Sequence record: ON529850.1
Direction: 5' to 3' (one strand)
DNA length: 64,000 bases
Shown here piece after piece: positions 19,468 through 56,672 of this stretch; positions within the stretch are counted from its first letter, which is position 1, and the number at the start of each line of letters is the position of its first letter. A program made the position numbers and the translations under genes. The notes below the pieces were generated by a model. That model saw nothing but the letters and a program-made list of their open reading frames with translations. It did not search any database and had not been told where the DNA came from.

Positions 19468-19818
19468 GGGCGCGAAAGCTCCAAGAACGCCGAAATTATG
19501 CCCTGTTTGCCAGAATTCACAACATTTCGTCAGAAATAACGGCGATTTCCGGATTCCTGAAAATGGATTCACAAAATTTTCGACAATTCGGTTCCGAAAT
19601 TTGAATTCGCTTCCAGGAAAACACGAGGTCGGTATAAAATTTGCCCCCTACCCCCCTCCCTTCGCCAGGCCAGGGGCAATTGCTAAATTTGATCCCTAGA
19701 CGCTTGGCGCCCCCGCGAGAATCGGGCCGAAGAGGGGGTCCGTGGGTCCCTCCGGTCCCATTTTGAAACAGGGGGGTGGCCCCCTCCGCCAAGGGAGGGA
19801 GCCGAGGGGAGGGGCGGG

Positions 19819-20055
19819 TTAGGCCGCCTCCGCCATTTCCGCCTGAACCGCGCGCTCGATGGCGGCGAAGTCGGCCGGGGAGGTGTTGGCCTTCAGGTCA
19901 TCCATGGTGCGGATTTGAGCGCCCTTCATGTTGGCCTTACGGAAAGCGGCGTTCAGGACGTAGTGGAAGCGCGTGGCGAGGGCTCCAGCTTGCTGAGCCG
20001 TCAGCAGCGACTGGAGGACTTCATAGTGCGAGGCGACCATTTGCATTTTCGTCAT
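19819..20055 (-). CDS. Cassette hypothetical protein
   Basis: Own promoter TTGATG-N17-TATAAC. Confidence 0.7.
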   Translation of the reverse strand: MTKMQMVASHYEVLQSLLTAQQAGALATRFHYVLNAAFRKANMKGAQIRTMDDLKANTSPADFAAIERAVQAEMAEAA

Positions 20056-20275
20056 TCCCTTCGGAGGGCGGGGCCGATCCCCGCCGCCGATGAGTCAGTT
20101 ATACGCAATGCGTTTCTTAACATCAACCCCTTTTTTGCATGAAAGGCCAAAAAAGTTCGCGCGCCGGGCCTGTTTTCAAGGCCCGCCGTTACGGCCCTTT
20201 TCCGGGCCGTGGAGCGGTTCGGGGCGCGGCGGGCGTCCTAGCCTTCCGCGCCCCTAGAAGGGCGTCAGCGCGCGC

Positions 20276-20539
20276 CTAGCGGGCCAGGGCGCGGGGTTCC
20301 GGCTCACAGCGCGCGCCGTCCAGTTCGGCGGCGGCGGTCACGCAGTCGAGCGCGGTTAGGTTCCAGTCTGCCACGTCGAGACGGTCAGGCTCTTGCGGAG
20401 TCGGGGCGGGCAGGATCAGGGAAAACGTCGGCTCTTGCGCCTTGGCGGGCATGAGGGCGGCGAAGCCGCGTTGATCGTCATACGTCGCCAAGGCGACGGC
20501 AAGGGCGATCATCAGGGCGAAGGGGATGGCGTTTCGCAT
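20276..20539 (-). CDS. Cassette protein with signal/TM segment
   Basis: MRNAIPFALMIALAVALA; AAAG RBS. Confidence 0.55.
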   Translation of the reverse strand: MRNAIPFALMIALAVALATYDDQRGFAALMPAKAQEPTFSLILPAPTPQEPDRLDVADWNLTALDCVTAAAELDGARCEPEPRALAR

Positions 20540-20594
20540 GGGCGGGGCTTTCGTGTGAGGGAGGGCGGGCGCGAAGCCCGCCCTAGAAGGGTTC

Positions 20595-20762
20595 TCAGGC
20601 CAGAACGTCACGGATGCGGGCCAGCGCGTCCGAGGGGCGCGGGGCTTCGCCAGTCCATTCGGCGCGGACGTGCGCCGGAACGGAAGCGGAGGCTTGCGGC
20701 TGCACCGGGGCGCGCGGGGTCATGCGGGCCGAGGGGGTCAGGGGCGAGCGGTGCTTGAACAT
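20595..20762 (-). CDS. 55-aa cassette protein (not in track)
   Basis: MFKHRSPL...RIRDVLA; GGAGA leader and TTGACA promoter. Confidence 0.6.
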   Translation of the reverse strand: MFKHRSPLTPSARMTPRAPVQPQASASVPAHVRAEWTGEAPRPSDALARIRDVLA

Positions 20763-20936
20763 GGGTCGTTCTCCGTGGTTGCCTCTCTCTTGTAAGGGCG
20801 AGGGTGTGCGTTGTCAACGCCTTTTTATCAGGAAAGATGGTTAACGGCCTCACCCGTTTTGTTAAGGTTAACGCAGGCGACGCATTTGTTAAGGTTAACA
20901 GCTTCGACGGTTTTGTTAAGGTTAACGCAGGCGGCT

Positions 20937-20972
20937 AAAAGAAAACCGCCCCGGCGCGCCGAGGCGGGGCGG
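20937..20972 (-). terminator. Intrinsic terminator, representative of the cassette terminators
   Basis: CCGCCCC...GGGGCGG hairpin followed by TTTTCTTTT on the minus strand. Confidence 0.8.
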
Positions 20973-20974
20973 GG

Positions 20975-21202
20975 TCAGGCCGCCCGGCGAAGGGGCGGCC
21001 CGGTCAGGGCGAAGGCGACCATGGGATAACCCCAGTCGATCAGGCGTTGCACGTTGTCATCCATGCGATCCGAATAGTAGCAGCGATCGCCGAAGTCTTC
21101 CGAGTCGGAAGCGGCGCGCGCGTTGTAATAATAGTCCTCGACTTCCGAAGCGACGATGTAGGCTTGAACGTGGGCGGCGTGGTCATCGGCGGCGAAGAAC
21201 AT
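20975..21202 (-). CDS. Cassette hypothetical protein
   Basis: Own promoter and terminator. Confidence 0.7.
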   Translation of the reverse strand: MFFAADDHAAHVQAYIVASEVEDYYYNARAASDSEDFGDRCYYSDRMDDNVQRLIDWGYPMVAFALTGPPLRRAA

Positions 21203-21320
21203 GGCGTTTCCTTTGGGGTTGCCGTTGAAGTCGCCCCCTTCTAGCGGGTAGGGTTGGAGGGTGTCAACCCCTCTTTTTGAAAAATGCGCCCGCCCCGGCG
21301 AACCGGGGCGGGCTGGATCG

Positions 21321-22235
21321 TCAGGCGGCCAGCGCCAGCGCCTCGGCGGCCTCGCCTTGCGGCTCTTGCGCGGCCTCCGCCTCGGCGGCCTTCAGGATGT
21401 AATCCGCCGCCGTCTGGGCCTTCGTGCAAGCCTGAATAAACGCCTTCGGGTTGGAGCGGATGCGCGCCGCCCAATGGCCGATATAGGCGGCGTGATCGGC
21501 GCGCTCGACACTGGCGAAGCCTTGCGAGGCGCAGATGAACGCCGCCGTCAGTTCCGCGACCAGTTCCTCAAAGGCGTAAGCCTCATCGCCGAATTCGCGG
21601 CCAAAGGTGCGGTTGAGTCGATGCTCCGCGCCGGTCCAATGCCCCAGCTCATGAAAGGCCGTCGAATAATAGCCGTCCGCGTTGATGAAATCGGCGAAGG
21701 CGGGCAGGTGGATGCGGTCAAAGGCGGGGGTATAGAACGCCTTAGACCCGCCGTGGCGCACGTCCGCGCCCGTGGCGGCGATCAGGGCGTCAGCGGCGGC
21801 GATGCGCTCCGCTTCGGGCAGGATCGAAGCCGGGGCGGCTTCGGGCAGTTCCACGCCCTCGCACTGCGCGATGTTGAACACGGTGTAGACCTTGGCGAAG
21901 AATCGCGAGGTCGTCTCGCCCGTCGCGGCGTCTTCCTTCGTGGTGCGCGACCAGAAGAAAACCGGGGTTCCCTTCTCGCCCTTGCGAACCGATCCGCCGC
22001 GCGCCTTGGCCTGTTTAAACGTCATCCAGACGGGTTCCGCGTAACCCTTGGCCTCTTGTTCCATCCACAACCAAAAGGTGTTGGCGCCGCGATAGGCGCG
22101 GCCTTCGATGTTGCGGGGCAGGGCCAGGGCCGAACCGCGCGCGGTCCAAGGCTTCGACCAAGGGCGAACGCCCGATTCCAGTTTACCGGCAATCGTGGCG
22201 GCGATCTTGTCAAACACTTCGTTAGCTTGTGCCAT
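21321..22235 (-). CDS. ardC: ArdC-like antirestriction protein (ssDNA-binding domain plus zincin-like domain)
   Basis: GVRPWSKPW, YRGAN, WMTFKQA..GG.VRKGEKG, VFNIAQ, YYSTAFHELGHWTG...RLNR, YAFEELVAE. Confidence 0.93.
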   Translation of the reverse strand: MAQANEVFDKIAATIAGKLESGVRPWSKPWTARGSALALPRNIEGRAYRGANTFWLWMEQEAKGYAEPVWMTFKQAKARGGSVRKGEKGTPVFFWSRTTKEDAATGETTSRFFAKVYTVFNIAQCEGVELPEAAPASILPEAERIAAADALIAATGADVRHGGSKAFYTPAFDRIHLPAFADFINADGYYSTAFHELGHWTGAEHRLNRTFGREFGDEAYAFEELVAELTAAFICASQGFASVERADHAAYIGHWAARIRSNPKAFIQACTKAQTAADYILKAAEAEAAQEPQGEAAEALALAA

Positions 22236-22321
22236 GGGGCGTCTCCGTTGCTGTCAACGTCGTTTTATTGGTTGGATGGGGGAGCGTCAAGCCCTTATTT
22301 TTAGAAAAATGCGGCCCGCCG

Positions 22322-22337
22322 TTAACCTCTCTTTAAC
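22322..22337. promoter_or_regulatory. Perfect CtrA-type box TTAA-N7-TTAAC upstream of the ardC promoter
   Basis: TTAA cctctct TTAAC; TTAACCAT also at 22380-22387. Confidence 0.55.
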
Positions 22338-22485
22338 TATTTCCTGTTAGTCTGGCTTGGGGAGGGATGCGCTAGGCCGTTAACCATATCGGTTAAGGTT
22401 AACATCGCGTTAAGGTTAACAGTTCGGACGGCGCAAGAAAAAGGCCGCCCGGCGAGGGCGGCCCGGATCAGTCGGGGCGGGGGCG

Positions 22486-22680
22486 TCAGTCCCAGCCCAG
22501 CGCGCGGCGGGCCTCGGCGCGAGCGGCGCGGCCATGCAGCGGGCGCGAGGCGACGGCCTCGCCGTCAAGGTCCATGTCGTCAAATTGGCGGGCGCGTTCG
22601 CGGCGGTCAGTCTGGCGGGCGAAGGCGGCGCGGCGCGCCTCGAAAGCGTCAACGTCATTACGGCGGAAAGTGCGGGCCAT
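22486..22680 (-). CDS. Cassette hypothetical protein
   Basis: Own promoter and terminator. Confidence 0.65.
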   Translation of the reverse strand: MARTFRRNDVDAFEARRAAFARQTDRRERARQFDDMDLDGEAVASRPLHGRAARAEARRALGWD

Positions 22681-22863
22681 GTCAGGACTCCAAGGGTTTG
22701 CGCCTCCGGCCTATCCGGGGCTTCATCAGGCTAGGCGGGGGCGTTCTGGGTGTCAACCTCTTTTTTGTAGAAAAATGGTTAACGGATTAGGGGCGCTGTT
22801 AACCTTAATTGTTAAGGTTAACGCGGACGGTCTAAAGAAAAGGGGCTTTTCAGCCCCTTCCCC

Positions 22864-23097
22864 TTAGTGGCGCGCCTTGGCTTGAGTCGCCAGCCGCAGG
22901 GCGGTTGCGCGGTCGATGCGCTTGCCTTGGAAGGTGTGCGAGTGGCGGGTGATACGGCCATTCGCGCCACGGTGAACGCGGGTCATCAGTTCGCCCCCGT
23001 TGACTTGCATCGTCGTCACCGTCAGGCGGGCGGCGCGGGCGGCGACCGTGGCGGTCGTCAGGGCAAGGCGGGCGTTCAGGTTGCGGGCGGTTTGCAT
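22864..23097 (-). CDS. Cassette hypothetical protein (basic)
   Basis: Conserved leader. Confidence 0.7.
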   Translation of the reverse strand: MQTARNLNARLALTTATVAARAARLTVTTMQVNGGELMTRVHRGANGRITRHSHTFQGKRIDRATALRLATQAKARH

Positions 23098-23340
23098 CGG
23101 GTGTCTCCCTGTTCCGATGACCCCAATCTAGGGGAGGGCTTGGGAGGTGTCAACCGCCTTTTTTCAGAAAAGATGGTTAACAGAATCGGGCCGTTTCGCC
23201 GGTCACGGCGAGGGGCGGCGCGGTCAGGGAACGGGGCGCGACCGGCGCAGGGCGCGCCGCCGGGTCGGCCCCTGCCCTCTCTAGGCTTGGGAAGGGCGCG
23301 GGCGACGGGGCGGCGCTTGAAAGGCCCTCGCGGGGGTAAA

Positions 23341-23434
23341 GTGAAGCGGCGTCAAGTCAAGTCCCGCGTAGGCGAAAGTGAAGCGGCGTCAAGTCAAGTC
23401 CGCATGAGCGAAAGCGAAGCGGCGTCAAGTCAAG
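23341..23434. repeat. Three copies of GAAGCGGCGTCAAGTCAAG
   Basis: Copies near 23343, 23380, 23416. Confidence 0.8.
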
Positions 23435-23484
23435 CGCGGGGCCGTAAACCCGGCCCGGTCAAGCCGGGCCGGGTCAGGGCAAGA

Positions 23485-23964
23485 TCAGGCCGACAACACG
23501 CGGCGATTGACGCGATTCGCGTAGGCCCAGGCGCGAGAGTCTTCCTCGGCGCGGGCGTAAGCCGCTTGGGCCTCGGCGGCGCGTTGCGCCTCGAAGGCTT
23601 CGCGCGGAAACGCCTTTTCGATGCGCTCGCGTTGAGTCTCGTGCCAAGGGCGCGGGTCATGCTTCGGCGCGGGGGCGCGCGGGGGCTTGCCGTCCAGCGT
23701 GACGCGGGCGCCGTTCAGGCCGTGCGACCACTGGCCGCCGGGGTTGAGCTGTTCCAGCAGGGTTTGCGGGTCCATGCCCTCGGGCGCCGTCAGGGCGAGG
23801 CCGGTGCGCTTGTTCAGGACGTGCGCGGGAAACAGTCCGGTTTCCGGGTCGCGCAGGATCAGCGCATATTCAGCGGCGTATCCGTCCGCGTTGATCTGTC
23901 CCGCTTCCAGCAGATAGGCGTTGATGGCGGGATTGGCGGCGATGGCTTTGGCGAGGGTCAGCAT
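23485..23964 (-). CDS. Cassette hypothetical protein
   Basis: Conserved leader. Confidence 0.75.
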   Translation of the reverse strand: MLTLAKAIAANPAINAYLLEAGQINADGYAAEYALILRDPETGLFPAHVLNKRTGLALTAPEGMDPQTLLEQLNPGGQWSHGLNGARVTLDGKPPRAPAPKHDPRPWHETQRERIEKAFPREAFEAQRAAEAQAAYARAEEDSRAWAYANRVNRRVLSA

Positions 23965-24108
23965 GGGGTGTCTCCGTTGCGTTGCCTCAAGGTGTAGCCG
24001 CTCGCCGCGTCAGTGTCAACCGCTATTTTTAATAAATCCAACGCCTCCGGGCGGGTTCGGCGTTAACCTTAACAAATCGCGAGGATGACGCCGGGGCGGC
24101 GCCTGGCC

Positions 24109-24429
24109 CTAGAGGGCGGGGAAGATCACCCGCCCTTGCGCCGTCACCTCATAATCCCACGCGGCGAACATGGCGGCTTCGGCCATGGCGTCAGCGAAAG
24201 ACACCTCGGCGGCGGCTTCGGCGGCTTCCAGCGCGTCGATCTCCGCCAGCTCCTCGGCGTAGGCGTCGGGGTCGCCGTAGCCGCAAGGGCGGTCGGGGCG
24301 ATTGGCGATCCACGCCTCCGCCTCGGCGAGGGTGATGCGGCCCATGGACGGGCGGACCCCGTAGTCGTTTTTGTAGAGGTCGGAATAGAGGCTGAAAACG
24401 TCGTCAGCGTAGGTGCGGGCTTCGGTCAT
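24109..24429 (-). CDS. Cassette hypothetical protein (start MTEARTY)
   Basis: GGAGAGA leader; YSDLYKNDYGVRP motif. Confidence 0.7.
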   Translation of the reverse strand: MTEARTYADDVFSLYSDLYKNDYGVRPSMGRITLAEAEAWIANRPDRPCGYGDPDAYAEELAEIDALEAAEAAAEVSFADAMAEAAMFAAWDYEVTAQGRVIFPAL

Positions 24430-24597
24430 GGCGTCTCTCCGGCGGGACCGTCCCGCCACTCGAACAATCTAGCAAAGAGAAGTTAACAAGAGGTAAACGC
24501 CGCGAGGTTTTTCGTCGGGCCGAGGCGGACGATGAATCGGGCAGGGTCCCCGAGGATGAATCGGGCAGGGTCCCCGTTAAGGTTAATGACCCAGGGC

Positions 24598-24714
24598 TTA
24601 GGGCTTACGCCCCTTGCGGGTGTAAGCCCCGCGCCCCTTCTTGGGGCGGACCACGCGGGGGCGATAAGCCGGGGTGGCGAGGGCGGCGGCGGCGGGGTTC
24701 TTTTTGGGCTTCAT
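24598..24714 (-). CDS. arfA: 38-aa ArfA-like alternative ribosome rescue factor (not in track)
   Basis: MKPKKNPAAAALATPAYRPRVVRPKKGRGAYTRKGRKP; conserved leader and TTGACA promoter. Confidence 0.7.
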   Translation of the reverse strand: MKPKKNPAAAALATPAYRPRVVRPKKGRGAYTRKGRKP

Positions 24715-24777
24715 GGGGTGTCTCCGTTGAAAGCAAAGACACCCTTAAAGGAAGCGCGGTTGACTGTCAACCCCTTT

Positions 24778-25482
24778 TTATTCGGATAAGCCCAGAGAGC
24801 CGGGCGCGATCTTCTGCCCCTGATCCAGTCGAACCGCCATCAGGCCCCGCAGGACTTCGCCGCGCGCCGCATCGTCGGGCAGGGCGTCGAGGCGCGCCGT
24901 CAGGGCCGCGCCGAACGTGCCGGGGAACAGGACGTGCGCCCCGTCTTGCGCGCGAACAGCGATGCGATCCGTCGCGGTCGTGTAGGGCGCCCACAGCGTC
25001 ACGCCGGGATATTCCGCCGCGACCGTCGCGCCAGGGCGAACCGGGGAGGGCTGGCCCGCGCCATAGCCCGCCGGGTGTTCGGTTTCGCCCGGTTGCGGGT
25101 CGGCGTAGCCTTTGCGGACCCGTTCGGCGATCTGCGACGCCGACACCAGCGCGCCGCTGGCATCGACGCGAACCTGGCCGCAAGGCTGTTCAATCACGAC
25201 GTAATCCAGCGCCGAGGCTTCATCATGGACGCGGTTGACGATCAGGCAGATGGTCGAGGCCGTGCCGTATTCCCCTTCGCGCAGGGTGAAGGACGCCCGG
25301 TAGGGATGCAGCGTGGTGGCGTAAACGCTGGCGGCGGTCTTGGCGGTCAGGACGCCTTGGCCGTTGTTGAGCTTCCACGCCGCCAGCTTCTTGGTGAAGC
25401 GTTCGGGCGGGCGCGGCGTCCCGTCGGAAAAGGCGACGAGGGCGCCCAGCGGGGCGGTGCGGATCAGTTCGGCGGCGTTCAT
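24778..25482 (-). CDS. Cassette protein; N-terminus resembles a rhizobial plasmid hypothetical family
   Basis: APLGALVAFSDGTPRPPERF.KKL.AWK; recalled similarity, unverified. Confidence 0.65.
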   Translation of the reverse strand: MNAAELIRTAPLGALVAFSDGTPRPPERFTKKLAAWKLNNGQGVLTAKTAASVYATTLHPYRASFTLREGEYGTASTICLIVNRVHDEASALDYVVIEQPCGQVRVDASGALVSASQIAERVRKGYADPQPGETEHPAGYGAGQPSPVRPGATVAAEYPGVTLWAPYTTATDRIAVRAQDGAHVLFPGTFGAALTARLDALPDDAARGEVLRGLMAVRLDQGQKIAPGSLGLSE

Positions 25483-25594
25483 GGGGCGTCTCCCGTTGTA
25501 GGTCCCTCCCTACTAGGGGCGGGCGCGCAAACTGTCAACCACTTTTTATCAGGTAAGGTCTTGTTAAGGTTAACGCCGGGACGGGGTGGGCGCG

Positions 25595-25948
25595 TCAGGG
25601 CAGACGCGCCGGGTCCAGCGTCAAGGCGCGCCGACGAATCGACAAAGCCCCGCGCGCGGTGCTTCGGGTCGATTTCTGCAACTTGCCCGACTTGGCGGCA
25701 CAGCAGGGGCAGACCTTGGGTTCAGTCGGCAGGACATGGCCCGCCAAGGGGTCGAGGGTGCCGCGAACCGATAGGGTCAGGGCCAGCCCTTGCAGGGCGA
25801 CGGGCGCGCCGGTGCGGCGACGGCGCAGGTCATCATGCACCGTCAGGCCCGCCGAAAGGCGATTCGGGCGCGTCACCGCCACAGGCGATATGGCGACGCG
25901 ATAGCCGCCCGGCATGAGCCGGCGCGTGTCAGGAACATAGCGGCGCAT
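25595..25948 (-). CDS. Cassette hypothetical protein with CPCC motif
   Basis: Coupled to upstream gene. Confidence 0.5.
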   Translation of the reverse strand: MRRYVPDTRRLMPGGYRVAISPVAVTRPNRLSAGLTVHDDLRRRRTGAPVALQGLALTLSVRGTLDPLAGHVLPTEPKVCPCCAAKSGKLQKSTRSTARGALSIRRRALTLDPARLP

Positions 25949-26163
25949 CAGTCGTCGGCCCGGTCCAGGGTGCGGCGCACGTATTCATAGAACATCCGCC
26001 CGGTCGAGCCGTTGGCGTTCTTGGGGGCGCGGTAACGGCGCGAGGCGGCGCATTCCAGCAGGGCGGAAACCTGCGACTGGCGCAGGGTGAAGAAGTTCGC
26101 GCCTTGCTCAATCTGGCAGACTTGCAGAATGTGATACGCTTCGTGTTTGGTCATGCGGGCCAT
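25948..26163 (-). CDS. Cassette hypothetical protein (start MARMTKH)
   Basis: Conserved leader; YRAPKNANGS motif. Confidence 0.75.
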   Translation of the reverse strand: MARMTKHEAYHILQVCQIEQGANFFTLRQSQVSALLECAASRRYRAPKNANGSTGRMFYEYVRRTLDRADD

Positions 26164-26301
26164 GGGGCGTCTCCGTTGTTGGCCCCTCCTTCTAGGGGCG
26201 GGCGCGCCGTCTGTCAACCGCTTTTTATCAGTTAAGGTTTTGTTAAGGTTAACGTGGGCGGGCCGAAGACCGCCCCGGCGGCGAGGCCGGGGCGGCGGGG
26301 C

Positions 26302-26814: not shown

Positions 26815-26965
26815 CGGGCGTCTCCGTTGTTGGGACCTCCCTTCTAAGGCCGGGCGCTCTTTCTGTCAACCTCTCTTCAGCAGTTAATGACTCGTTAAGG
26901 TTAATGCGACCGACACGCAAAAAGGGGCGTCGCCATTCCGGCGCCGCCCAGTCTTGCACTCCGTA

Positions 26966-27232: not shown

Positions 27233-27387
27233 GAGGCGTCTCCGTTGTTGACGCCCTACATCTAGGGCAGGCCGGGCTAGGTGTCAACAACTCTTTTTCA
27301 GAAAAGAGCGTTAATCCGCCGGGGCTCCGCGTTAACCTTAACGCCGGGTGAAGACGATGCGCCCCGGCGCGGAGCCGGGGCGTCGCC

Positions 27388-27672: not shown

Positions 27673-27675
27673 GGC

Positions 27676-47257: not shown

Positions 47258-47299
47258 GGGGTGTCTCCCGTTGTTCGTTGGGTCCGGTATAGGCCGGGA

Positions 47300-48148: not shown

Positions 48149-48152
48149 CGCC

Positions 48153-49243: not shown

Positions 49244-49403
49244 GTCGGGTGTCTCCGTTGCTCTGTCTCTCTTCTAGCCGGGGCGGTTTCAAGTGTCAAC
49301 CGCTTTTGCGTAGATAATGCCGGAGCGACGTTAACCTTAATGCGGTGTTAAGGTTAATGCGAACGGGGCGCAGAAAGGCGGTCCGTCAGGACCGCCCCTC
49401 GCG

Positions 49404-49976: not shown

Positions 49977-49985
49977 GGGCGTCTC

Positions 49986-50189
49986 CTACAGGGCCAGGGC
50001 GGCGTCGAAGGCCGCCGATTGCAGTTTCTTGGCGGCTTCGGCTTCGCGGGGGTGCCGTTGCGCCATGCCGTCAAAGCGTTCTTTCTGGTGCGACCGCTCG
50101 CCGTCAGCGGTGGTCATGTTCATCACCTCGCCCCACAGGTGGGCCATTTCGAGGATCAGGACGGAACGGCGGGAAGCGTTCATAGTCAT
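49986..50189 (-). CDS. Cassette hypothetical protein
   Basis: Conserved leader. Confidence 0.7.
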   Translation of the reverse strand: MTMNASRRSVLILEMAHLWGEVMNMTTADGERSHQKERFDGMAQRHPREAEAAKKLQSAAFDAALAL

Positions 50190-50260
50190 CGGGTGTCTCC
50201 GGTTGCGGTGGTTCTGTCTTAGCCCGCCGCAACCACAGTGTCAACCGTTCTTTTTCAACA

Positions 50261-50737
50261 TCAGCACCGCCGCAGCATTTCGCGCGTCAAGGCTTCTTCC
50301 TGGCGGGCGATGTCAATCGCGGCGCGCTCATTCGCCTTGGCGTGGGCGCTGGCGGCCTGTTCCTGACAGATGGCCTGACGCCGGCGAATCTCATTGGTCG
50401 AAAGGGTGCGGAACAGGACGTCGGCGTCCTGATCGACCTTGACGGTCCAGTGCTGCGCGGATTCATCGTCCGACCGCAGGTGCGGCGGGAAATAGATGTC
50501 CGCCACGTCCTGTTGAAAGAAGGTGCCGTCGCCGCGCATCTTGCGTTCCAGGTCCGCCACCTCGGCGGGCGCGATCTCGTCGATTGAGAAGGTCACGCTT
50601 TCGCCCAGGCCGTCGCCCTCGTCGATGAAATGGCCGATCTGCCCCAGCGACATACGCTCGACGGCGTGAACGTCTTCGGGCGTATGGGCCGTGTGCAGAA
50701 CCGTCACGGTGATGACGGTGCGGATGATCTGAGGCAT
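50261..50737 (-). CDS. Cassette hypothetical protein (start MPQIIRT)
   Basis: Conserved leader. Confidence 0.72.
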   Translation of the reverse strand: MPQIIRTVITVTVLHTAHTPEDVHAVERMSLGQIGHFIDEGDGLGESVTFSIDEIAPAEVADLERKMRGDGTFFQQDVADIYFPPHLRSDDESAQHWTVKVDQDADVLFRTLSTNEIRRRQAICQEQAASAHAKANERAAIDIARQEEALTREMLRRC

Positions 50738-50888
50738 GGGGTGTCTCCCGTTGTTGTTCGCCGCCTGTGTAAGGCGGTCGAAAAGGAGTGTCAACCTCTT
50801 TTTCACAGTAAGTCGTCAACCTTAATGCGGTGTTAAGGTTAACGCGAACCGTGCGCGCAAAAGAAAACCCGGCCGAAGCCGGGTTCCC

Positions 50889-51221
50889 TCAGAAAGGTAT
50901 GTCGGAGTCCAGCGCGGGCGCCGGCTCGACGGGGGCGGGCGGGGCGTTCAGGGCGGCGATGTAGGCCGCCTGTTCCGCCTCGCTCATGTCCCAGAAGGAA
51001 TCATCTTCCGGGTGCGGGCCGCGCGGTCCCCGATAGTGGGGGTTGCGCTCCCAGGTGTCGAACGGCGACAGCACATATTCGCTGTCCGGGTCGAGGCTCC
51101 CATAGGCCGAGGCATACTGAAACACCGCCTCGCTCATGTATTCCGCCTGTCCCATCGCCTCCTGCGCCAGGGCGTCCGCCTTTTCGCGCTCGTAGGCGTC
51201 GACTCGTTCCAGGTAGTCCAT
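50889..51221 (-). CDS. Cassette hypothetical protein
   Basis: GGAGA leader; LSPFDTWERNPHYRGP..PHPED motif. Confidence 0.75.
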   Translation of the reverse strand: MDYLERVDAYEREKADALAQEAMGQAEYMSEAVFQYASAYGSLDPDSEYVLSPFDTWERNPHYRGPRGPHPEDDSFWDMSEAEQAAYIAALNAPPAPVEPAPALDSDIPF

Positions 51222-51417
51222 GTTCAGTTCTCCGGTTGAAGCTACTTCATGGCGGTTCTCCTTGGGTTGGGGTTGCTCTCGTCTTGAGGCCCCACCATAG
51301 CGTGGCGGTTCAGGGTGTCAACACCTTTTTCGTAGAAAAATCGTCGGTCGGGCGCTGTTAAGGTTAATGCGACCGGATCGCAGTTGGACCCCGGCCTAAG
51401 CCGGGGTCGGGTGCGCG

Positions 51418-51774
51418 TCAGCCGCCGAGGCGCTGGATGATTTCGTCATTCGACATCGTGTCCATCAGTTCCTCGACGCGGCGGGCCTTTTCATCCTCGA
51501 CCTTCTGGGCCGCCGCCTGGGCGCGGCGATAGTCGGCCATCGCCGCCTTGCCCGCCTCGGTCGTCTCGGGATCGACCGTCATGTAAAGCGTGACCTCGCG
51601 GCCCTGGCGATCCACGAAGACCGGGCGCCCGGACGGCGTCATCGTCACGGTGAAATGGTGCTTGACCAGCCGATTGGCGGTCTCCATCCCGAAGTCGCCG
51701 CCGAAGCAGCCGCCGGCCGCCTTGACCGTGTGGTTTTTACGCAGGCGGGTGTGATAGCCGATATTCTTGTGCAT
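51418..51774 (-). CDS. Cassette hypothetical protein
   Basis: Conserved leader. Confidence 0.72.
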   Translation of the reverse strand: MHKNIGYHTRLRKNHTVKAAGGCFGGDFGMETANRLVKHHFTVTMTPSGRPVFVDRQGREVTLYMTVDPETTEAGKAAMADYRRAQAAAQKVEDEKARRVEELMDTMSNDEIIQRLGG

Positions 51775-51938
51775 GGGGTGTCTCCTCCCTTGATCTGCCC
51801 CAGGGTATAGCCGGGGCGGCTCTAGGTGTCAACCCCTTTTTCATAGAAAAATGCCGGGGATGCGTTAAGGTTAACGCGAACCGGTCGCGAAAGATGCGCC
51901 CGGCCGGGGGAGACAAGCCCGGCCGGGCGCGGTTCGGT

Positions 51939-52565
51939 TCAGACGGCGACGTGCTTGCCGGTCTCGTCGAACCAATAGCCGTTGATCTTCAACGTCTCGT
52001 TGACCGCCTCGTCGGAGGTTTTGGCCTCGTAAGCCTCGCGAAGCTGTTCCCAAATCCAGTCCATGTATCGGCGCAGGACGTTCGCCAGGGCGCGCTCCGT
52101 CTCGGGCGTCACGTCGCCGTCTTCGCCGAAGGTGACATGAATATCCACGGACCCCGAATGGGTGTAGCGGTCGCGGTGGCTGATCTCCGCGCGCAGGGCG
52201 AAGCCGTTGTCTTGTTGCAGGGTGAACAGGTCGGCGGCGATTTGAAGCAGCTTCGCATCGCGCGGCGCCTCTTCCTTGAGCGCCGCGAGGGCGCCGGCCT
52301 TGAAGACGTAGCCGCCGGTGAAACAGGCGCCGTCGCCTTGGGTGTAGAAGCCGCTCCACAGGATGCGCGGGCTTCCGTTCAGTTCGGTGTCGAGGGTGAT
52401 TCCCATCAGGGCGGCGAAGGCGTCCGCCTCTTCCAGGACCGGTTCGGCATAGTCGGTGTCGCCCGACATCACCACGTCGGTGAACCACGTCCGCGCGGCT
52501 TCCTTGGCCGTTTCGGTCGGCAGTTCGTCGATCTGGTAGAGGGTGCGGGTCTGGATCATGGGCAT
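51939..52565 (-). CDS. Homolog of a plasmid/ICE protein family often labelled antitoxin of TA stability system
   Basis: LYQIDEL...AKEAARTWF, WSGFYTQGDGACF, WIWEQL.E.YE..TSDEAV.E.L..N.Y.F.E.G; recalled family pattern. Confidence 0.7.
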   Translation of the reverse strand: MPMIQTRTLYQIDELPTETAKEAARTWFTDVVMSGDTDYAEPVLEEADAFAALMGITLDTELNGSPRILWSGFYTQGDGACFTGGYVFKAGALAALKEEAPRDAKLLQIAADLFTLQQDNGFALRAEISHRDRYTHSGSVDIHVTFGEDGDVTPETERALANVLRRYMDWIWEQLREAYEAKTSDEAVNETLKINGYWFDETGKHVAV

Positions 52566-52732
52566 GGCGGGCGTCTCCGTTGCGGTGTCCCTGTGATGTA
52601 GCCGGGGCGGGTAAGGGTGTCAACCTCTTTTTATCAGAAAAACATCATGGGGCTGCGTTAACCTTAATGCAGTGTTAAGGTTAACGCGAACGGGTCGCAG
52701 AACGCCCCGGCCGAAGCCGGGGCGGGCGCGGG

Positions 52733-53263
52733 TCAGCCTTCGCCGAAGTAGAAGGCGCTCAGCCACGTCATGATGGCGGCGTCGTCTTCGTAGCTGGTCG
52801 GGTAGTCGGTCCACGGCGTCCCCCAGTCCTGATATTGCAGGCGCGGGTTCGACGGGTCGCCCCACGAACCCAGGTCGCCGCGCAGGCGCAGGGCCGGGCC
52901 GCCGGTGGACAGCAGGACTTCGAATTCTTCGGCGCCGTCGCGGTCCTCGGGATCGCGCGGGCCGGGGTTGCGCCAGCCGTCGCGCACCTGCACCGACAGA
53001 ACCGATTCGGTGATGGTCTGGCGCACGTCGTCCGCGTCCACCTCCTCGGCCTCGACCGGCTCGACGCTGTAGTCGTCCAGACCGGCGGCCTCGGCGGCGT
53101 CCTCGGCTTCCGTCTCGGTGTCGTAGGTGGCGCTCTCATAGCCTTCGGCTTCGATGACGTAGCCGGTCGGCTCGGCGTCGCCGTTGGCGGCGTTCAGCTG
53201 CGCGGCCTGCTCCTTGATGGTTTCGAGCCAGGCGGCGGCGTTGTTCTTGGCGTGGTCGCTCAT
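52733..53263 (-). CDS. Cassette hypothetical protein (extremely acidic)
   Basis: Conserved leader; EEFEVLLSTGGPA, LQYQDWGTPW motifs. Confidence 0.78.
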   Translation of the reverse strand: MSDHAKNNAAAWLETIKEQAAQLNAANGDAEPTGYVIEAEGYESATYDTETEAEDAAEAAGLDDYSVEPVEAEEVDADDVRQTITESVLSVQVRDGWRNPGPRDPEDRDGAEEFEVLLSTGGPALRLRGDLGSWGDPSNPRLQYQDWGTPWTDYPTSYEDDAAIMTWLSAFYFGEG

Positions 53264-53437
53264 GTCGGTGTGTCTCCCGTTGTTGTGTCTCCCTTCTAGG
53301 CCGGGCGGGCGGGAGTGTCAACACTTCTTTTTCAGAAAAATGGTTAACGTCGGGCGGGCGGCGGTTAACCTTAATGCGGCGTTAAGGTTAATGCGAGCGG
53401 ACCGCAGAACGCCCCGGCCGAAGCCGGGGCGGGCGAC

Positions 53438-53683
53438 TCAGTCCCGGCTCATGCCGGGAAAGTTCGGGTTGGCGTCGCACCACGCCTGCGCCTCGGCCTC
53501 GGTGGCCAAGGGCGGGCGCGCGAGGCCGGTGGTGCCGTCGGGGTGTTCGACCGTCCAGCCCGCCGCCTCGCGGGTCCAGTGGGGGCGGTCGGCCTCGCTC
53601 GTCCAGGGGGCGGCGCCCCGGATCGAGGCGGTGCGGCCGGTCACGGCGTGGCGCCAGACAAAGTGTTCGATGGGGCGGCTCAT
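53438..53683 (-). CDS. Cassette hypothetical protein
   Basis: Conserved leader. Confidence 0.75.
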   Translation of the reverse strand: MSRPIEHFVWRHAVTGRTASIRGAAPWTSEADRPHWTREAAGWTVEHPDGTTGLARPPLATEAEAQAWCDANPNFPGMSRD

Positions 53684-53757
53684 GGGGGCGTCTCCGTTGT
53701 TGATGACACCCTTCTAGCGGGGCGCCGAAAGGGTGTCAACCTCTTTTTATCAGAAAA

Positions 53758-54546
53758 TCAGTCCCGCGTGTCGGCGATCATCTGCGCCGTCTCGGCGGCG
53801 ATCTCGGCGCGCGGGCCGACCAGCAGCCAGCCGTCTTCGTCGGCGCTCGGGTCGAAGACGACCCAAGGCCCGGCGTATTGCGTCGCGCGCACGATCAGCG
53901 CGGCCTTGATCGCCTCATGCCGGGCGGCGATCTCGTCCGGCGTCAGGGACGGGGCGCCCGAAAAGGCGTTGATTTCGAATCGGCCTTCAAAGAAGTCGGC
54001 GCGGCGGCGGAACCGATAGCCGCCCGCCCGCGTGGCGTGTTCGGCCTGCGAATAGATTTCGGCGCCGAACAGATGGCCCATCACGTCGCCCCTGTTCTGA
54101 TTGGTCAGGAAGGCGGGCGGATCGACAAAGCGCACGATCAGGCCCAGGAATTCGCTTTCGGTGAAATAGCCGGTGACGACGGCGCGCCCCAGGTTGTTGA
54201 AGTTGGCTTCCACCTCGGCGCCGACGGCGGGCGGGGCGTCCACGCCGCCCCAGCGCGGCAGGCCCTTGGACGGGGCGATCTCGCCGTCTTCCAGCGTCTC
54301 CAGCGGCTCCCAGGCGGGCAGCTCCGGGGTCCAGCCGTAGGCGTAGGTGTCCAGCAGCCAGGACGGGCCGTAACGGTTGCGGATCAGCCGCAATTCGATC
54401 CCGTGGGTGTCGTCGTCCATCTCGGTCGAGTCGGCCCAGGCGTCGCACAGGACGTTCTTCCAGCCGGGGCCGTGCGCGTTGGCGAACGATTGCAGGGCGG
54501 CGGCGGCGGCCCCGCTCAAGGGCCTATAGACGAAGGTGTCAGTCAT
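53758..54546 (-). CDS. Cassette multidomain hypothetical protein
   Basis: Conserved leader. Confidence 0.75.
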   Translation of the reverse strand: MTDTFVYRPLSGAAAAALQSFANAHGPGWKNVLCDAWADSTEMDDDTHGIELRLIRNRYGPSWLLDTYAYGWTPELPAWEPLETLEDGEIAPSKGLPRWGGVDAPPAVGAEVEANFNNLGRAVVTGYFTESEFLGLIVRFVDPPAFLTNQNRGDVMGHLFGAEIYSQAEHATRAGGYRFRRRADFFEGRFEINAFSGAPSLTPDEIAARHEAIKAALIVRATQYAGPWVVFDPSADEDGWLLVGPRAEIAAETAQMIADTRD

Positions 54547-54591
54547 GGGGCGTCTCCCGTTGCGGTGTTGATCCTGTCTAGCCGGGCGGCG

Positions 54592-54804
54592 TCAGGTTGT
54601 CAACCCCTTTTCTGTGGAAATTGTTTCACGCGGCTGGACTGCATAGGTGCGCCGCACGGCGCGCTCCGCGCCCTGCTTCTGCAAGGCCAGCTTGAGGCAG
54701 CGGTGCGCCTCCGCCTTGTCGCCCGACAGGGCGGCCTCTTCGGCGCGGCGGGCGAAATACAGCTTGGCGCGGCGGGAATAGCGGGCGGCGATCTTGGCGT
54801 TCAT
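54592..54804 (-). CDS. Basic helical protein, paralog of 27676-27855
   Basis: KLYFARRAEEAALSG; conserved leader. Confidence 0.72.
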   Translation of the reverse strand: MNAKIAARYSRRAKLYFARRAEEAALSGDKAEAHRCLKLALQKQGAERAVRRTYAVQPRETISTEKGLTT

Positions 54805-54986
54805 CGGATGTCTCCGTGGTGTCTGTCCTCTCTTCTAGGGCAGGGCGGGGAGGGTGTCAACCTCTTTTCTGTAGAAAATGCAGGAGACCCGTTAACCTTA
54901 ATGCGGCGTTAAGGTTAATGCGAACGGCTCGCGTTAACCTTAACAGGACGGGGCGGGGGCGGCCCGCCAGCGGCGGGCCTTGTCGG

Positions 54987-55061
54987 CTATTTGAACAGCA
55001 TGACGACGACGACGGCGAGCGCCAGTTTCCACGCGCCGAGGGCGCGGTCCAGCGCCTTCAT
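54987..55061 (-). CDS. 24-aa hydrophobic peptide, paralog of 35109-35183
   Basis: MKALDRALGAWKLALAVVVVMLFK; ATGA overlap with upstream gene, GGAGG RBS. Confidence 0.65.
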   Translation of the reverse strand: MKALDRALGAWKLALAVVVVMLFK

Positions 55062-55357
55062 GCGCCCTCCGGCGCGATGAAATAGACGCGATCAATAAAC
55101 GTCACCTCGACGCCTTGGGGCTGTTCGTCCGGGCGGTCGGTCTCCAGATCGGCGTCGATCAGCACGGTCTGGAGGCTGTTCTCCAGCCACGTTACATAAT
55201 CAGGGTCCGTGTCCGCCGTCTCCAGAACGGCGTCAAGGTCGGCGTCGAGATTGGCGCGCAGCGTCTGCACGGCGTCGAGCCAGTCCATCGGACCTGCGGG
55301 CGCCTCTTCGGGCAGATAGCCCGGCACATTGGTGCCGACGACATATTGCTGGGACAT
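55058..55357 (-). CDS. Cassette hypothetical protein (acidic, start MSQQYVV)
   Basis: AAAGG RBS, TTGACA promoter; GTNVPGYLPE motif. Confidence 0.7.
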   Translation of the reverse strand: MSQQYVVGTNVPGYLPEEAPAGPMDWLDAVQTLRANLDADLDAVLETADTDPDYVTWLENSLQTVLIDADLETDRPDEQPQGVEVTFIDRVYFIAPEGA

Positions 55358-56672
55358 GGGCGGGGCCTTTCGTGTTGCGGTCCTGTCTTGTCCCACGACC
55401 GGCGACAGGTGTCAACCGCTTTTCTTCAGAAATCTTCGACGCGCGGCGGGGTGGCGTTAACCTTAACGCTTCACCCTAACCGTTAAGGTTAATGCGAACC
55501 GCTCGCGTTAACCTTAATAACCCTGCACCGCGTGCGGGTATGGCCGGGTCATACCCGGTATGACCGGGGAGGGCCGGACGGCCTTAAACCAGGGCCGGGC
55601 CTGGATGACTCGCGCGGCGTTAACCTTAACAAAAGGTTAATTGCGAATGCGTCGCAGGTGCTTTATCAACGCTGGCCCCCGGCCCCCCTGAGACCCGGCC
55701 CCCTCAGATGCGAATGCGTCGCAGGAGGTCTCGCATGATCCGGCCCCCCGGCCCCTGGGCGGGCGGGCGAAACCAAACCGCGTCGAATCAAGCCGGCGTC
55801 GAATCGAAACGACGTCAAGTCAAGTTTGGCTCCAGCGAAACGAAACGCGCGCGCGTCAAATCGGCCGCGCGTCAAATTTCGCTCCCGTTGAATCGATCGG
55901 GCGTCAAGTCGCGTTGAAGCGCGCTCGCGTCAAATCGATCGGGCGTCAAGTCGCCAGGCGGGGCGTCGAAGCGCGCGGGCGTCAAGTCGACCCGGCGCGT
56001 CGAAACCCCAGGGCGTCAAGCCGGGGTGTCGAGGACGCGGAGCGCGGATCAGGCGCGCGACGCCGTCCGGCAAGGAGGACAGCCCGCCGGCCGGCGCCTG
56101 GACAATACACGCCCTCGACGCCCCATCGGGACCCGGATCGCCGGCGCTGTCAAGCGGCGGGGCGGGGAGGGGCGATTGTGCAGGTGCGAAATGGACCCGC
56201 CGCAGCGAAGCGCGGTTGACGGCGACGGGGCGTTTGGCGGCGTAAAGAAACCCGCTGCGGTCCAGGCGGGGCGGGGAATCCGCTGTCACGAAAGCCCTCA
56301 AAGATGACTCTGGGGATGGGGCGGTTTTCGTAAGGCGGGGGCGGCGGGTCGCCGGTCTGAAGCGGGGGTCCAGGGCGGATCAGGACCAAATAAGGCGAGA
56401 ATGGGGCAGTCACGAAATTCGGAGCCGGGCGGCGGGGCGAATTCGGGCGTTTGTTGAAAACATTGAGGTTTTCGGGAGGGTTTCGTGACTCGGATCAGGG
56501 GCTCAGGGCCTACTTTGGGTTGAAATTGCCACGAAAACGGGGGCGAATCCCAGTCACGTTTCTATAAGTCGTTGTTTTTACGTGGAAAATATCTTTGAGT
56601 CACGAATCCCCTCAAGGGTGACTACGTCAACACCGGGTCGACAAGCGCCGGGCGGCGCCCGATCCTACAGAT

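What the first reader, a model, noticed from the sequence alone, without database searches (positions are those of the whole stretch)
19800..55500. 36-kb array of about 45-50 autonomous expression cassettes bounded by a conserved regulatory/recombination module
Seen: nearly every ORF here is preceded on the minus strand by the same module. It runs: upstream gene's GC hairpin terminator, GTTAACCTTAAC box(es), an A-tract, TTGAC(A/G)-N17-TAGRRG, then CAAC(G)GGAGACRCCC-ATG. Example at 26164-26230: TGATAAAAAGCGG TTGACA N17 TAGAAG...CAACGGAGACGCCCC ATG. Cargo is mostly 1-2 short unrelated ORFs, including ardC and several duplicated genes. Established: the promoter-stem-loop cassettes (PeSL) of T4-type phages shuffle ORFans by recombination. 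Inference: this is a much larger plug-and-play library for immediate-early host-takeover/anti-defence genes, expanded and purged by recombination between the repeated modules.
Basis: partly seen in the sequence, partly recalled or inferred. Interest (0 to 1): 0.9.

Follow-up and report, generated by a model that had tools for sequence, protein, structure and literature searches.

The report
Phage early-gene cassette array, cell-cycle boxes
A 36-kb stretch of a giant Brevundimonas phage is a row of about 48 small, self-contained promoter-gene-terminator units with nearly all cargo of unknown function, carrying the binding-site letters of the host cell-cycle regulator CtrA, and it gains and loses units by recombination between its repeated control modules.

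Summary
The window is Brevundimonas phage vB_BpoS-Gurke (phiCbK-like jumbo phage). Between terL and the portal genes, 66 minus-strand genes are served by 48 near-identical promoters (TTGACA, 17 nt, TA..., GGAGAC, ATG); at least 32 genes end at strong terminator hairpins. Forty promoters have TTAACCTTAA-type boxes upstream.

TTAA boxes concentrated in the terminal repeat of phiCbK-like phages are published as CtrA (host cell-cycle regulator) sites (PMC9437464). Boundary motifs shared with three relatives predict that the array fills a terminal repeat of about 38.5 kb.

New here:
- The boxes are under purifying selection: 97% identity against Kikimora, versus 85.5% for other intergenic DNA.
- Their centre is always CC/GG (205 of 205 in four phages).
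- Sister phages carry orthologous genes behind a different promoter type, a CtrA box in place of the -35.
- Six whole-cassette gains or losses against Kikimora have junctions inside modules, at varying positions. That indicates homologous, PeSL-like shuffling, not site-specific recombination.

Early timing, CtrA binding and an anti-defence role (only ArdC is recognisable) remain inferred. Verdict: a new variant of known kinds, of moderate interest.

The parts
19819..55520 (-). The array: 66 annotated genes (median 114 aa), 48 repeated promoters, at least 32 terminator hairpins
   Evidence: First T of each TTGACA (window coordinates, minus strand): 55415, 54860, 54603, 53739, 53321, 52623, 51832, 51321, 50794, 50244, 49299, 48592, 47695, 47314, 45856, 45115, 44663, 43856, 43257, 42219, 41383, 40287, 39387, 38565, 37623, 36388, 34582, 33785, 33311, 32756, 32338, 31842, 31413, 30663, 29985, 29515, 28768, 27909, 27287, 26869, 26217, 25538, 24770, 24019, 23153, 22756, 21267, 20817. 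The ardC promoter uses TTGACG at about 22283. Coding fraction is 75% against 92% in the flank. Median intergenic length is 144 nt against 1 nt.
19707..58227 (-). Predicted direct terminal repeat (about 38.5 kb) that contains the array; inferred, not shown
   Evidence: The first bases of the phiCbK repeat align to window 58222-58197, inside terL at about codon 655. A GGGACCC element lies exactly 38 nt before the annotated right repeat end in phiCbK, CcrSC and CcrPW, and Gurke has it at 19750-19744. The GenBank record is a collapsed 'circular' assembly.
26161..26295 (-).
   Evidence: Terminator hairpin 26295-26270; 12-mer box 26253-26242; further TTAAC 26235-26231, which makes TTAA-N7-TTAAC with the box; -35 TTGACA 26217-26212; 17-nt spacer; -10 TAGAAG 26194-26189; GGAGAC 26174-26169; ATG 26163-26161.
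21321..22235 (-). ardC-like gene (annotated 'DNA primase' in GenBank)
   Evidence: Pfam ArdcN 1.6e-37 and MPTase-PolyVal zincin 8e-45.
55640..57451 (-). Leader block A between terL and the first cassette: GGGGACCC repeats, TTCGTGAC motifs, small ORF, TTGAC(G) iterons
   Evidence: The same GGGGACCC repeats sit at the left of the phiCbK and CcrSC repeats.
34690..36400 (-). Internal copy of the leader block, splitting the array into two sub-arrays
   Evidence: Six GGGGACCC at an exact 24-nt period (36233-36113, inside ORF 35328-36329); GTCACGAA four times (35327-35228); small hydrophobic ORF; TTGAC iterons 35031-34964. A matching gap is present in Kikimora and Marchewka.
23350..24580 (-). Third, smaller block with GGGGACCC (2 copies) and TTGAC iterons (6 copies)
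20875..21288 (-). Gurke-specific whole cassette (gene 20975-21202), absent from Kikimora
   Evidence: The edges fall between the ardC terminator and the A-tract on one side, and inside the box cluster on the other.
24779..25593 (-). Gurke-specific cassette (box, promoter, gene 24778-25482)
25949..26303 (-). Gurke-specific cassette (terminator, box, promoter, gene 25948-26163), lying between two genes that are adjacent in Kikimora
32464..32699 (-). Gurke-specific cassette (gene 32469-32702). The single Kikimora module is a hybrid of the two flanking Gurke modules.
   Evidence: The crossover lies between the terminator and the -35.
41445..42157 (-). Gurke-specific cassette (gene 41464-42162), with overlapping alignment at a module
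48601..49235 (-). Gurke-specific cassette (gene 48734-49243)
   Evidence: The crossover lies in the shared SD/ATG stretch.
45947..46273 (-). Gurke-specific gene (45953-46264) without its own promoter, at the 3' end of an operon
57452..60187 (-). terL, the upstream neighbour; 99.5% identical to Kikimora terL
18751..19467 (-). Trypsin-like peptidase gene, the first gene after the array, followed by portal (16391-18361)

Best explanation
The region is the early-gene region of a phiCbK-like jumbo phage, and it probably fills a direct terminal repeat of about 38.5 kb.

Shown:
- It holds 48 near-identical host-type promoters: TTGACA, 17 nt, TA at a fixed place inside a CTA.A context that fits the Caulobacter sigma-73 -10 motif, a leader of about 20 nt, GGAGAC, then ATG.
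- Each promoter drives 1-4 small genes, and most units end at a GC hairpin with a short T tail. Each unit is therefore transcriptionally autonomous and insulated.
- Between terminator and promoter sit TTAACCTTAA(C) boxes and TTAACCAT half-sites. Sequence conservation shows them to be functional.

Inferred:
[quoted passage not shown] - In sister phages the same genes sit behind promoters whose -35 is replaced by a canonical CtrA box, the strictly CtrA-dependent type.

Shown by comparison: the modules are alike enough to recombine. Cassettes are gained, lost and reordered between relatives, with junctions at varying points inside modules. Whole arrays carry one promoter type, which implies homogenisation by recombination or gene conversion.

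Inferred: the cargo is an accessory set expressed early from host RNA polymerase. Only ArdC points to anti-defence.
For: - Identity and context.
- Promoter geometry and counts. The sigma-73 consensus comes from PMC13004042.
- Terminators and gene spacing.
- Boxes: enrichment. 61 of 62 12-mers and 14 of 14 TTAA-N7-TTAA sites in the whole genome lie in this region. Identity to Kikimora at aligned positions is 97.0% for boxes, 100% for the -35 and 98.1% for the SD, against 85.5% for other intergenic DNA and 73.6% for the promoter spacer. The centre dinucleotide is CC/GG in 62/62, 53/53, 52/52 and 38/38 boxes of four phages.
- CtrA literature: sites are concentrated in the terminal repeats of phiCbK-like phages, with gel shifts and CtrA-dependent reporter activity for phiCbK gp005 and gp018. 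The CtrA motifs are TTAA-N7-TTAA, TTAACCAT and TTAA.
- Promoter types in relatives.
- Terminal-repeat inference.
- Recombination. The flank control is (2 gene-level indels in 19.8 kb against 10 in 36 kb). Neighbouring modules are more alike than distant ones, with 0 of 5000 permutations reaching the observed value.
- Cargo.
Against: - There are no expression, TSS or binding data for this phage.
- The phiCbK infection RNA-seq table that would show the timing of its repeat genes is not held.
- The boxes lie 26-110 nt upstream of the -35. Activating CtrA sites are reported near the -35 and repressing ones over the -10.
- Only 14 canonical TTAA-N7-TTAA sites exist. The dominant 6-bp spacing of TTAA is not a described CtrA site.
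- Most -10 hexamers lack the final T, so the generic sigma-70 scan accepts only a handful.
- The terminal repeat rests on conserved boundary motifs, not on reads.
- Indel enrichment over the flank is only about threefold.
- Two-genome comparisons cannot tell gain from loss.
Confidence: 0.62

Rival explanations
1. The TTAACCTTAA boxes are operators for a phage-encoded regulator, not for host CtrA. One candidate is the Cro/CI-type HTH protein GURKE_02060 or a TgrL-like XRE factor. It would switch the whole early array off, or on, in one step. The rest of the anatomy stays as in the best explanation.
For: - The box reads as an inverted repeat (GTTAA, 2 nt, TTAAC), the usual shape of an HTH-dimer operator.
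- It lies outside the positions where CtrA is known to act.
- It occurs in either orientation, at variable distance from the promoter in Marchewka.
- The phage encodes HTH_3 proteins.
- phiCbK makes an XRE factor very early in infection.
- The box coexists with canonical CtrA-box promoters in Marchewka, so it could serve a second factor.
Against: - The centre is invariably CC/GG, never a symmetric CG or GC (205 of 205). The element therefore reads better as two tandem TTAAC half-sites.
- The same letters recur as TTAACCAT and as TTAA-N7-TTAAC in the same modules.
- The box is identical in phages of Caulobacter and Brevundimonas whose HTH_3 homologues are only 31-38% identical. That homologue is also present in box-poor phiCbK, CcrPW and Bajun. 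Host CtrA is reported as 87% identical between the two genera.
Confidence: 0.2
2. The modules are alike only because each unit needs a strong host-type promoter, ribosome site and terminator. Cassette turnover would then be an unselected by-product of ordinary homologous or illegitimate recombination in dispensable DNA, not a 'plug-and-play library'.
For: - Indel density is only about three times that of the flank.
- Some differences do not involve modules: a promoterless gene at 45953-46264, a tandem gene copy in Kikimora, and one in-frame length difference inside gene 42385-43200.
- Only two paralogous pairs exist.
Against: - Similarity extends to positions with no known promoter role and decays with distance along the array.
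- Each phage has one promoter type across about 50 units, although orthologous genes in sister phages carry the other type. This needs sequence exchange between modules, not convergence alone.
- Three junctions show hybrid modules.
Confidence: 0.14
3. The module is a site-specific recombination site, and the array is an integron-like cassette store served by a phage recombinase.
For: - The array has repeated boundary elements with small inverted repeats: the box and the adjacent GCGA-N5-TCGC, 30 copies.
- A tyrosine recombinase gene exists elsewhere in the genome (GURKE_02790).
Against: - Crossover points differ between events: terminator-to-promoter stretch, SD/ATG.
- Every cassette has its own promoter.
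- No recombinase gene adjoins the array.
- The seven box-less promoters still bound cassettes.
Confidence: 0.04

Closest known systems
CtrA-binding-site-dense direct terminal repeats of phiCbK-like (Dolichocephalovirinae) phages (Mascolo et al. 2022, PMC9437464)
   Same: - Same phage subfamily.
- Same position, starting inside terL and running downstream.
- Same content: many small genes of unknown function.
- Same extreme concentration of intergenic TTAA-type sites in one end region.
- 'Gain/loss of sites following rearrangements' is noted there too.
   Different: - In phiCbK, CcrPW, Bajun and Marchewka the CtrA box replaces the -35. In Gurke, Kikimora and CcrSC the -35 is TTGACA, and the boxes are TTAACCTTAA elements 26-110 nt upstream.
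- The array is about four times longer than in phiCbK.
- The paper does not describe the cassette architecture, the 6-bp box, the switch of promoter type or module-mediated turnover.
PeSL (promoter-early stem-loop) cassettes of T4-type phages (Arbiol et al. 2010, PMC2839356; Comeau et al. 2014, PMC4122927)
   Same: - A composite motif of A/T-rich tract, sigma-70-like early promoter, stem-loop terminator, SD and start codon.
- About 50 copies per genome, placed before ORFans in variable regions.
- Differences between close relatives are explained by recombination between motifs.
   Different: - There is no sequence or lineage relation.
- The hairpin here is a separate upstream terminator, not embedded in the promoter.
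- An extra regulator-box layer is present.
- All copies sit in one contiguous co-oriented 36-kb block, probably inside a terminal repeat, rather than in scattered hyperplastic regions.
- Mini-circles were not tested.
Pre-early (first-step-transfer) region in the terminal repeat of coliphage T5, as summarised in Gill et al. 2012 (PMC3556154)
   Same: A terminal-repeat location of genes read by host RNA polymerase first after entry. phiCbK-like phages carry a T5 A1 homologue elsewhere in the genome.
   Different: - T5 has eight such genes, not 66.
- Two-step DNA transfer is not known for this group.
- No T5 pre-early homologues were found among the cargo by Pfam or PHROGs.
Integron gene-cassette arrays
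   Same: A one-directional row of short unrelated genes separated by repeated boundary elements.
   Different: Integron cassettes lack promoters, recombine at a fixed point in attC, and depend on an adjacent integrase. None of this holds here.

Membership tests
CtrA-site-dense terminal-repeat region of phiCbK-like phages | Phage of the phiCbK-like group infecting an alphaproteobacterium that has CtrA | tested here: met
   100% match to Brevundimonas phage vB_BpoS-Gurke, Dolichocephalovirinae. terL is 52% identical to phiCbK terL.
CtrA-site-dense terminal-repeat region of phiCbK-like phages | Strongly skewed genome position of TTAA-N7-TTAA sites | tested here: met
   14 of 14 canonical sites, 61 of 62 12-mers and 171 of 267 TTAA lie in five of the 33 ten-kb bins of the 321.5-kb record.
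CtrA-site-dense terminal-repeat region of phiCbK-like phages | Sites lie in intergenic, promoter-proximal DNA | tested here: met
   40 of 48 promoters have a box within 110 nt upstream.
CtrA-site-dense terminal-repeat region of phiCbK-like phages | Region is the direct terminal repeat | tested here: inconclusive
   The position and both boundary motifs are conserved with three phages whose repeats are annotated. The record is a collapsed circle, and reads are not available here.
CtrA-site-dense terminal-repeat region of phiCbK-like phages | CtrA binds the sites and changes transcription | not testable with these tools
   This is shown for phiCbK gp005 and gp018, whose box sits at the -35. The Gurke boxes have a different spacing and position.
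PeSL cassettes (T4-type phages) | Compact motif with A/T tract, sigma-70-like promoter, SD and start codon before ORFans | tested here: met
   57 of 60 cargo proteins have no Pfam family.
PeSL cassettes (T4-type phages) | Stem-loop placed within or overlapping the promoter | tested here: not met
   The hairpins lie 60-130 nt upstream of the -35, directly after the preceding stop codon.
PeSL cassettes (T4-type phages) | Differences between close relatives have junctions in the motifs | tested here: met
   Six whole-cassette differences against Kikimora have edges in modules, and three show hybrid modules.
PeSL cassettes (T4-type phages) | Circular excision products (mini-circles) | not testable with these tools
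   This needs reads or PCR on a lysate.
PeSL cassettes (T4-type phages) | T4-type myovirus lineage | tested here: not met
   The phage is a siphovirus of Dolichocephalovirinae. The likeness is in the way of working only.
Integron cassette array | Adjacent integrase and a fixed crossover point in the boundary element | tested here: not met
   No recombinase gene lies in or next to the array. Junction positions vary.
Integron cassette array | Promoterless cassettes read from one common promoter | tested here: not met
   48 of 66 genes have their own promoter.
ArdC anti-restriction proteins (gene 21321-22235) | N-terminal ArdcN domain plus C-terminal zincin metallopeptidase domain | tested here: met
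   Pfam PF08401 at 1.6e-37 and PF18818 at 8e-45, both above the curated cut-offs.

The most novel reading that the evidence does not exclude
The TTAACCTTAA boxes make the whole 48-promoter early programme a readout of the host cell cycle. Alternatively they are a sink for its regulator: about 60 conserved boxes per repeat copy, so about 120 per virion DNA if the region is terminally redundant, could hold CtrA~P on entering and replicating phage DNA and draw it away from the host origin and regulon. On this reading, the wholesale switch between two promoter types in sister phages (CtrA box at the -35 versus TTGACA with upstream boxes) is concerted evolution across about 50 units. It would reset how strictly the phage waits for the host cell cycle.
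Probability: 0.2. Interest if true: 0.75.

Novelty: new variant of a known kind. Interest (0 to 1): 0.5.

Why it matters
If the reading holds, this phage group offers a natural experiment in how a virus wires about 50 accessory genes to a host master regulator. The same genes sit behind CtrA-box promoters in one lineage, and behind consensus host promoters with upstream boxes in another. The array also shows, outside the T4 group, that repeated promoter-terminator modules act as recombination handles for ORFan turnover. That makes PeSL-type shuffling a general design rather than a T4 peculiarity. In practical terms it marks 60-odd early ORFans, with ArdC among them, as candidates for host-takeover or counter-defence functions. 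It also corrects the annotation of the 'DNA primase' gene and of the genome ends.

Tried and rejected
- Rfam at gathering threshold over 18-58 kb gave no family. ARAGORN found no tRNA in the window.
- The generic terminator scan was not above its shuffles (24 against 21.3), because the hairpins here have short T tails. A custom hairpin search was used instead.
- An IMG/VR scan for box plus TTGACAC found only the contig of CcrBL9's length and one chance hit, so no new relatives came from it.
- The phyletic pattern of the phage HTH_3 protein did not separate box-rich from box-poor phages.
- The phiCbK infection RNA-seq table (S3 of PMC10688885) is cut in the held copy and holds no phage rows. 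The timing of phiCbK repeat genes could not be read.
- Pfam and PHROGs on the cargo gave almost nothing.
- A literature search for the 12-mer found only an unrelated paper.
- Rejected readings: an integron-like site-specific system (varying junctions, own promoters), recent tandem duplication of whole cassettes (only two paralogous pairs), and a MITE-like mobile element (the module carries promoter, SD and start codon, and has no terminal inverted repeats).
- Not done: protein database searches and structure prediction for the cargo. I judged them secondary to the question about the module.

Full report
**Identity and setting**

The window is the last 64 kb of the GenBank record of Brevundimonas phage vB_BpoS-Gurke. 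The record is 321,510 bp and the host is B. pondensis LVF1. The phage belongs to Dolichocephalovirinae, the phiCbK-like prolate siphoviruses. All genes of the region lie on the minus strand. The order is terS, terL (57452-60187), a 1.8-kb gene-poor leader, the array (55.5 to 19.8 kb), a trypsin-like peptidase gene, then portal.

**Observation check**

- The box GTTAACCTTAAC (up to 2 mismatches) gives 107 strand-hits against 0.8 expected, all between 19330 and 60207.
- TTGACA-N16-18-TA occurs 47 times on the minus strand of 19.7-57.4 kb and never on the plus strand.
- The geometry is rigid. The spacer is 17 nt in 44 of the 47 promoters that have a TA. Where GGAGA is present, it starts 43-47 nt after the -35 in all but one promoter, and the ATG follows about 10 nt later.
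- Of 66 annotated genes (median 114 aa), 48 have their own promoter within 80 nt.
- At least 32 genes are followed by a hairpin of dG <= -10 with a T-rich tail.
- The array is 75% coding with a median gap of 144 nt. The flank is 92% coding with a median gap of 1 nt.
- Corrections: TAGAAG is the -10 in only 16 promoters, units fully bounded by terminators number about 35-40, and there are only two paralogous pairs.

**The promoter**

Over 75 ungapped nt anchored on the -35, the modules are 52.7% identical pairwise, against 27.5% for random 75-mers of the array. Besides TTGACA, the G before it and an AA.AG stretch 4-8 nt upstream are nearly invariant. The TA of the -10, with CC or GC before it and an A two positions after, is shared by 73-94% of copies.

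This fits the Caulobacter sigma-73 description: -35 TTGaCg and a long -10 GCtANAWC (PMC13004042). The generic sigma-70 scan accepts few of them because the last -10 base is rarely T.

**The boxes**

- Every TTAA-N2-TTAA in the arrays of Gurke, Kikimora, Marchewka and CcrSC has CC/GG at its centre: 62/62, 53/53, 52/52 and 38/38. The element is therefore TTAACC followed by TTAA(C), two tandem half-sites 6 bp apart, rather than a freely symmetric palindrome.
- Canonical TTAA-N7-TTAA sites number only 14 (0.02 expected). They arise mostly where two boxes abut.
- TTAACCAT occurs 13 times (0.34 expected). It usually lies 26-27 nt before the -35.
- Box positions cluster at 35/29, 54/48 and 81/75 nt before the -35.
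- Forty of 48 promoters have a box. The seven without any TTAAC have no 12-mer box and, except 21267, follow the upstream gene without a terminator.
- At positions aligned to Kikimora, boxes are 97.0% identical, the -35 100%, the SD 98.1% and the -10 91.9%. Other intergenic DNA is 85.5%, coding DNA 88.1% and the promoter spacer 73.6%. The boxes are functional elements under constraint.
- In a piecewise scan of the whole genome, 61 of 62 boxes and all canonical sites lie in this region.

**What the boxes are**

Mascolo et al. (PMC9437464) reported that predicted CtrA sites (TTAA-N7-TTAA) are concentrated in the terminal repeats of phiCbK-like phages, in promoter regions of genes of unknown function. 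They also showed that CtrA binds and activates phiCbK gp005 and gp018. The CtrA motifs are the full site, the ungapped TTAACCAT and the half-site TTAA. Activating sites lie near the -35 and repressing ones over the -10 (PMC6180460).

The Gurke letters are those of CtrA half-sites. The 6-bp spacing and the upstream position, however, are not the described ones. I take CtrA as the most likely binder, at about one in two. Three points favour it:
- The same letters appear in all three forms within one module.
- The asymmetric centre is invariant.
- The box is identical in phages of two host genera whose own HTH_3 proteins are only 31-38% identical, whereas CtrA is reported as 87% identical between the genera.

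A phage regulator remains a serious rival.

**Terminal repeat**

In phiCbK the repeat (10,287 bp) starts inside terL. In CcrPW it is 18.4 kb and in CcrSC 23.9 kb.
- The first bases of the phiCbK repeat align to window 58222-58197, at about terL codon 655.
- A GGGACCC element lies exactly 38 nt before the annotated right end in all three phages. Gurke, Kikimora and Marchewka have the same element just after the last array gene, in Gurke at 19750-19744.
- This predicts a repeat from about 58227 to about 19707, some 38.5 kb, collapsed in the 'circular' record. This is inference.

**Two promoter types**

- phiCbK, CcrPW, Bajun and Marchewka have a canonical CtrA box in place of the -35. Marchewka has 51 such promoters on the coding strand, with 11 nt to the TA in 39 of them (four of those also have a TA at 13 nt), and only one TTGACA promoter.
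- Gurke, Kikimora and CcrSC have TTGACA with boxes upstream. CcrBL9 also matched the box-plus-TTGACAC pattern at four places.
- Orthologous genes carry different types in Gurke and Marchewka. Examples are ardC and the genes at 23485-23964 and 29611-29931, which are 80-88% identical in protein.
- By terL identity Gurke is nearest to the Marchewka group (72%) and farthest from CcrSC (47%). The TTGACA type therefore appears in two separate branches.
- One type per genome across about 50 units points to exchange between modules.

**Recombination**

Against Kikimora (terL 99.5% identical), the 36-kb array shows 10 gene-level differences. There are 2 in the 19.8 kb of flank inside the window, and 2 further discontinuities in the 28 kb beyond it.
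- Six differences are whole promoter-bearing cassettes whose edges lie in modules.
- For 32469-32702, the single Kikimora module matches the upstream Gurke copy up to the -35 and the downstream copy after it.
- For 48734-49243, the switch lies in the shared SD/ATG stretch.
- Varying junctions mean homologous recombination, not a fixed site.
- Against Marchewka, several cassettes are in a different order and one is inverted.
- Neighbouring modules are more alike than distant ones: 60.9% falling to 51.1%, with 0 of 5000 permutations reaching the observed value.

**Cargo**

Of 60 proteins scanned with Pfam, only ArdC (21321-22235, annotated as a DNA primase), DUF7447 and DUF6926 pass the cut-offs. 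Five of the 20 largest match PHROGs, and all five families are of unknown function. 'Anti-defence library' is therefore a plausible guess resting on one gene.

**Comparison with known systems**

- It works like PeSL cassettes (PMC2839356), but it is unrelated to them, has a separate upstream terminator, and adds a regulator-box layer.
- It is a member of the CtrA-site-rich terminal-repeat regions of phiCbK-like phages, with a variant promoter architecture that the paper does not describe.
- It is not integron-like.

**Novelty and score**

This is a new variant of known kinds. The genome and the CtrA-repeat link are published. The cassette anatomy, the invariant 6-bp box and its conservation, the switch of promoter type, the junction maps and the 38.5-kb repeat prediction appear to be new. 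Interest is 0.5.

The first two were later found in papers, and only those sourced forms are used here. The third is not used. No consensus of the module was printed. Conservation is given as shares.

Noticed in passing
window 56920-57100 (minus strand); also 36113-36240 and 24551-24582: Tandem GGGGACCC-containing repeats. Seven or eight copies at a 23-33-nt period lie after terL, six copies at an exact 24-nt period lie inside ORF 35328-36329, and two more lie at 24.5 kb. The same repeats sit at the left of the phiCbK and CcrSC terminal repeats. Their function is unknown. ORF 35328-36329 may not be a real gene.
   Followed up: partly
window 55800-56040, 34964-35050, 23355-23433: Three clusters of iteron-like TTGAC(G/T) direct repeats (about 12, 7 and 6 copies), each downstream of a GGGGACCC block. 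This suggests origin-like or protein-loading sites that are repeated within the array.
   Followed up: partly
window 56290-56610 and 35210-35330: The motif TTCGTGAC / GTCACGAA occurs 5 + 5 times in the two leader blocks and also upstream of phiCbK gp002 and gp003. It may mark a different promoter or regulator class from the array modules.
   Followed up: no
window 19744-19750 and the homologous places in phiCbK, CcrSC, CcrPW, Kikimora, Marchewka: A GGGACCC element lies exactly 38 nt before the annotated right end of the terminal repeat in three phages. It is a possible marker for the end-forming step and a tool for predicting repeat ends in collapsed assemblies.
   Followed up: yes
window 21321-22235: GenBank product 'DNA primase' (TraC in Kikimora) is an ArdC-type protein: ArdcN plus a zincin peptidase domain.
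   Followed up: yes
array terminators, e.g. 38594-38666, 45877-45949, 47715-47787, 51860-51932: A subfamily of six to seven nearly identical long terminator hairpins with a TTGTCTCCCCC-type loop (repeat family D20). They are far more alike than their neighbouring genes.
   Followed up: no
between terminator and box in about 30 modules, e.g. 40324-40336: A small inverted repeat GCGA-N5-TCGC directly abuts the box (30 copies in Gurke, 19 in Kikimora, 18 in Marchewka, 4 in CcrSC). Its role is unknown.
   Followed up: partly
Gurke record outside the window: L011 7819-8340 and 10770-11192; L012 3689-4279, 8393-9073, 10171-12321: The phage encodes a GcrA homologue, Cro/CI-type HTH proteins and a tyrosine recombinase. 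It also has genes annotated as motA-like and histidine kinase that have no Pfam support. All of these are candidate players in host cell-cycle or early-gene control.
   Followed up: partly
CcrSC locus L009, promoters from 6990 onward: In CcrSC the TTGACA promoters carry a CGCAT ... ATGCG inverted repeat across the spacer. This operator-like feature is absent from Gurke.
   Followed up: no
window 24598-24714: The small gene is the counterpart of Kikimora's 'alternative ribosome-rescue factor' gene. It is a possible translation-related early function.
   Followed up: no
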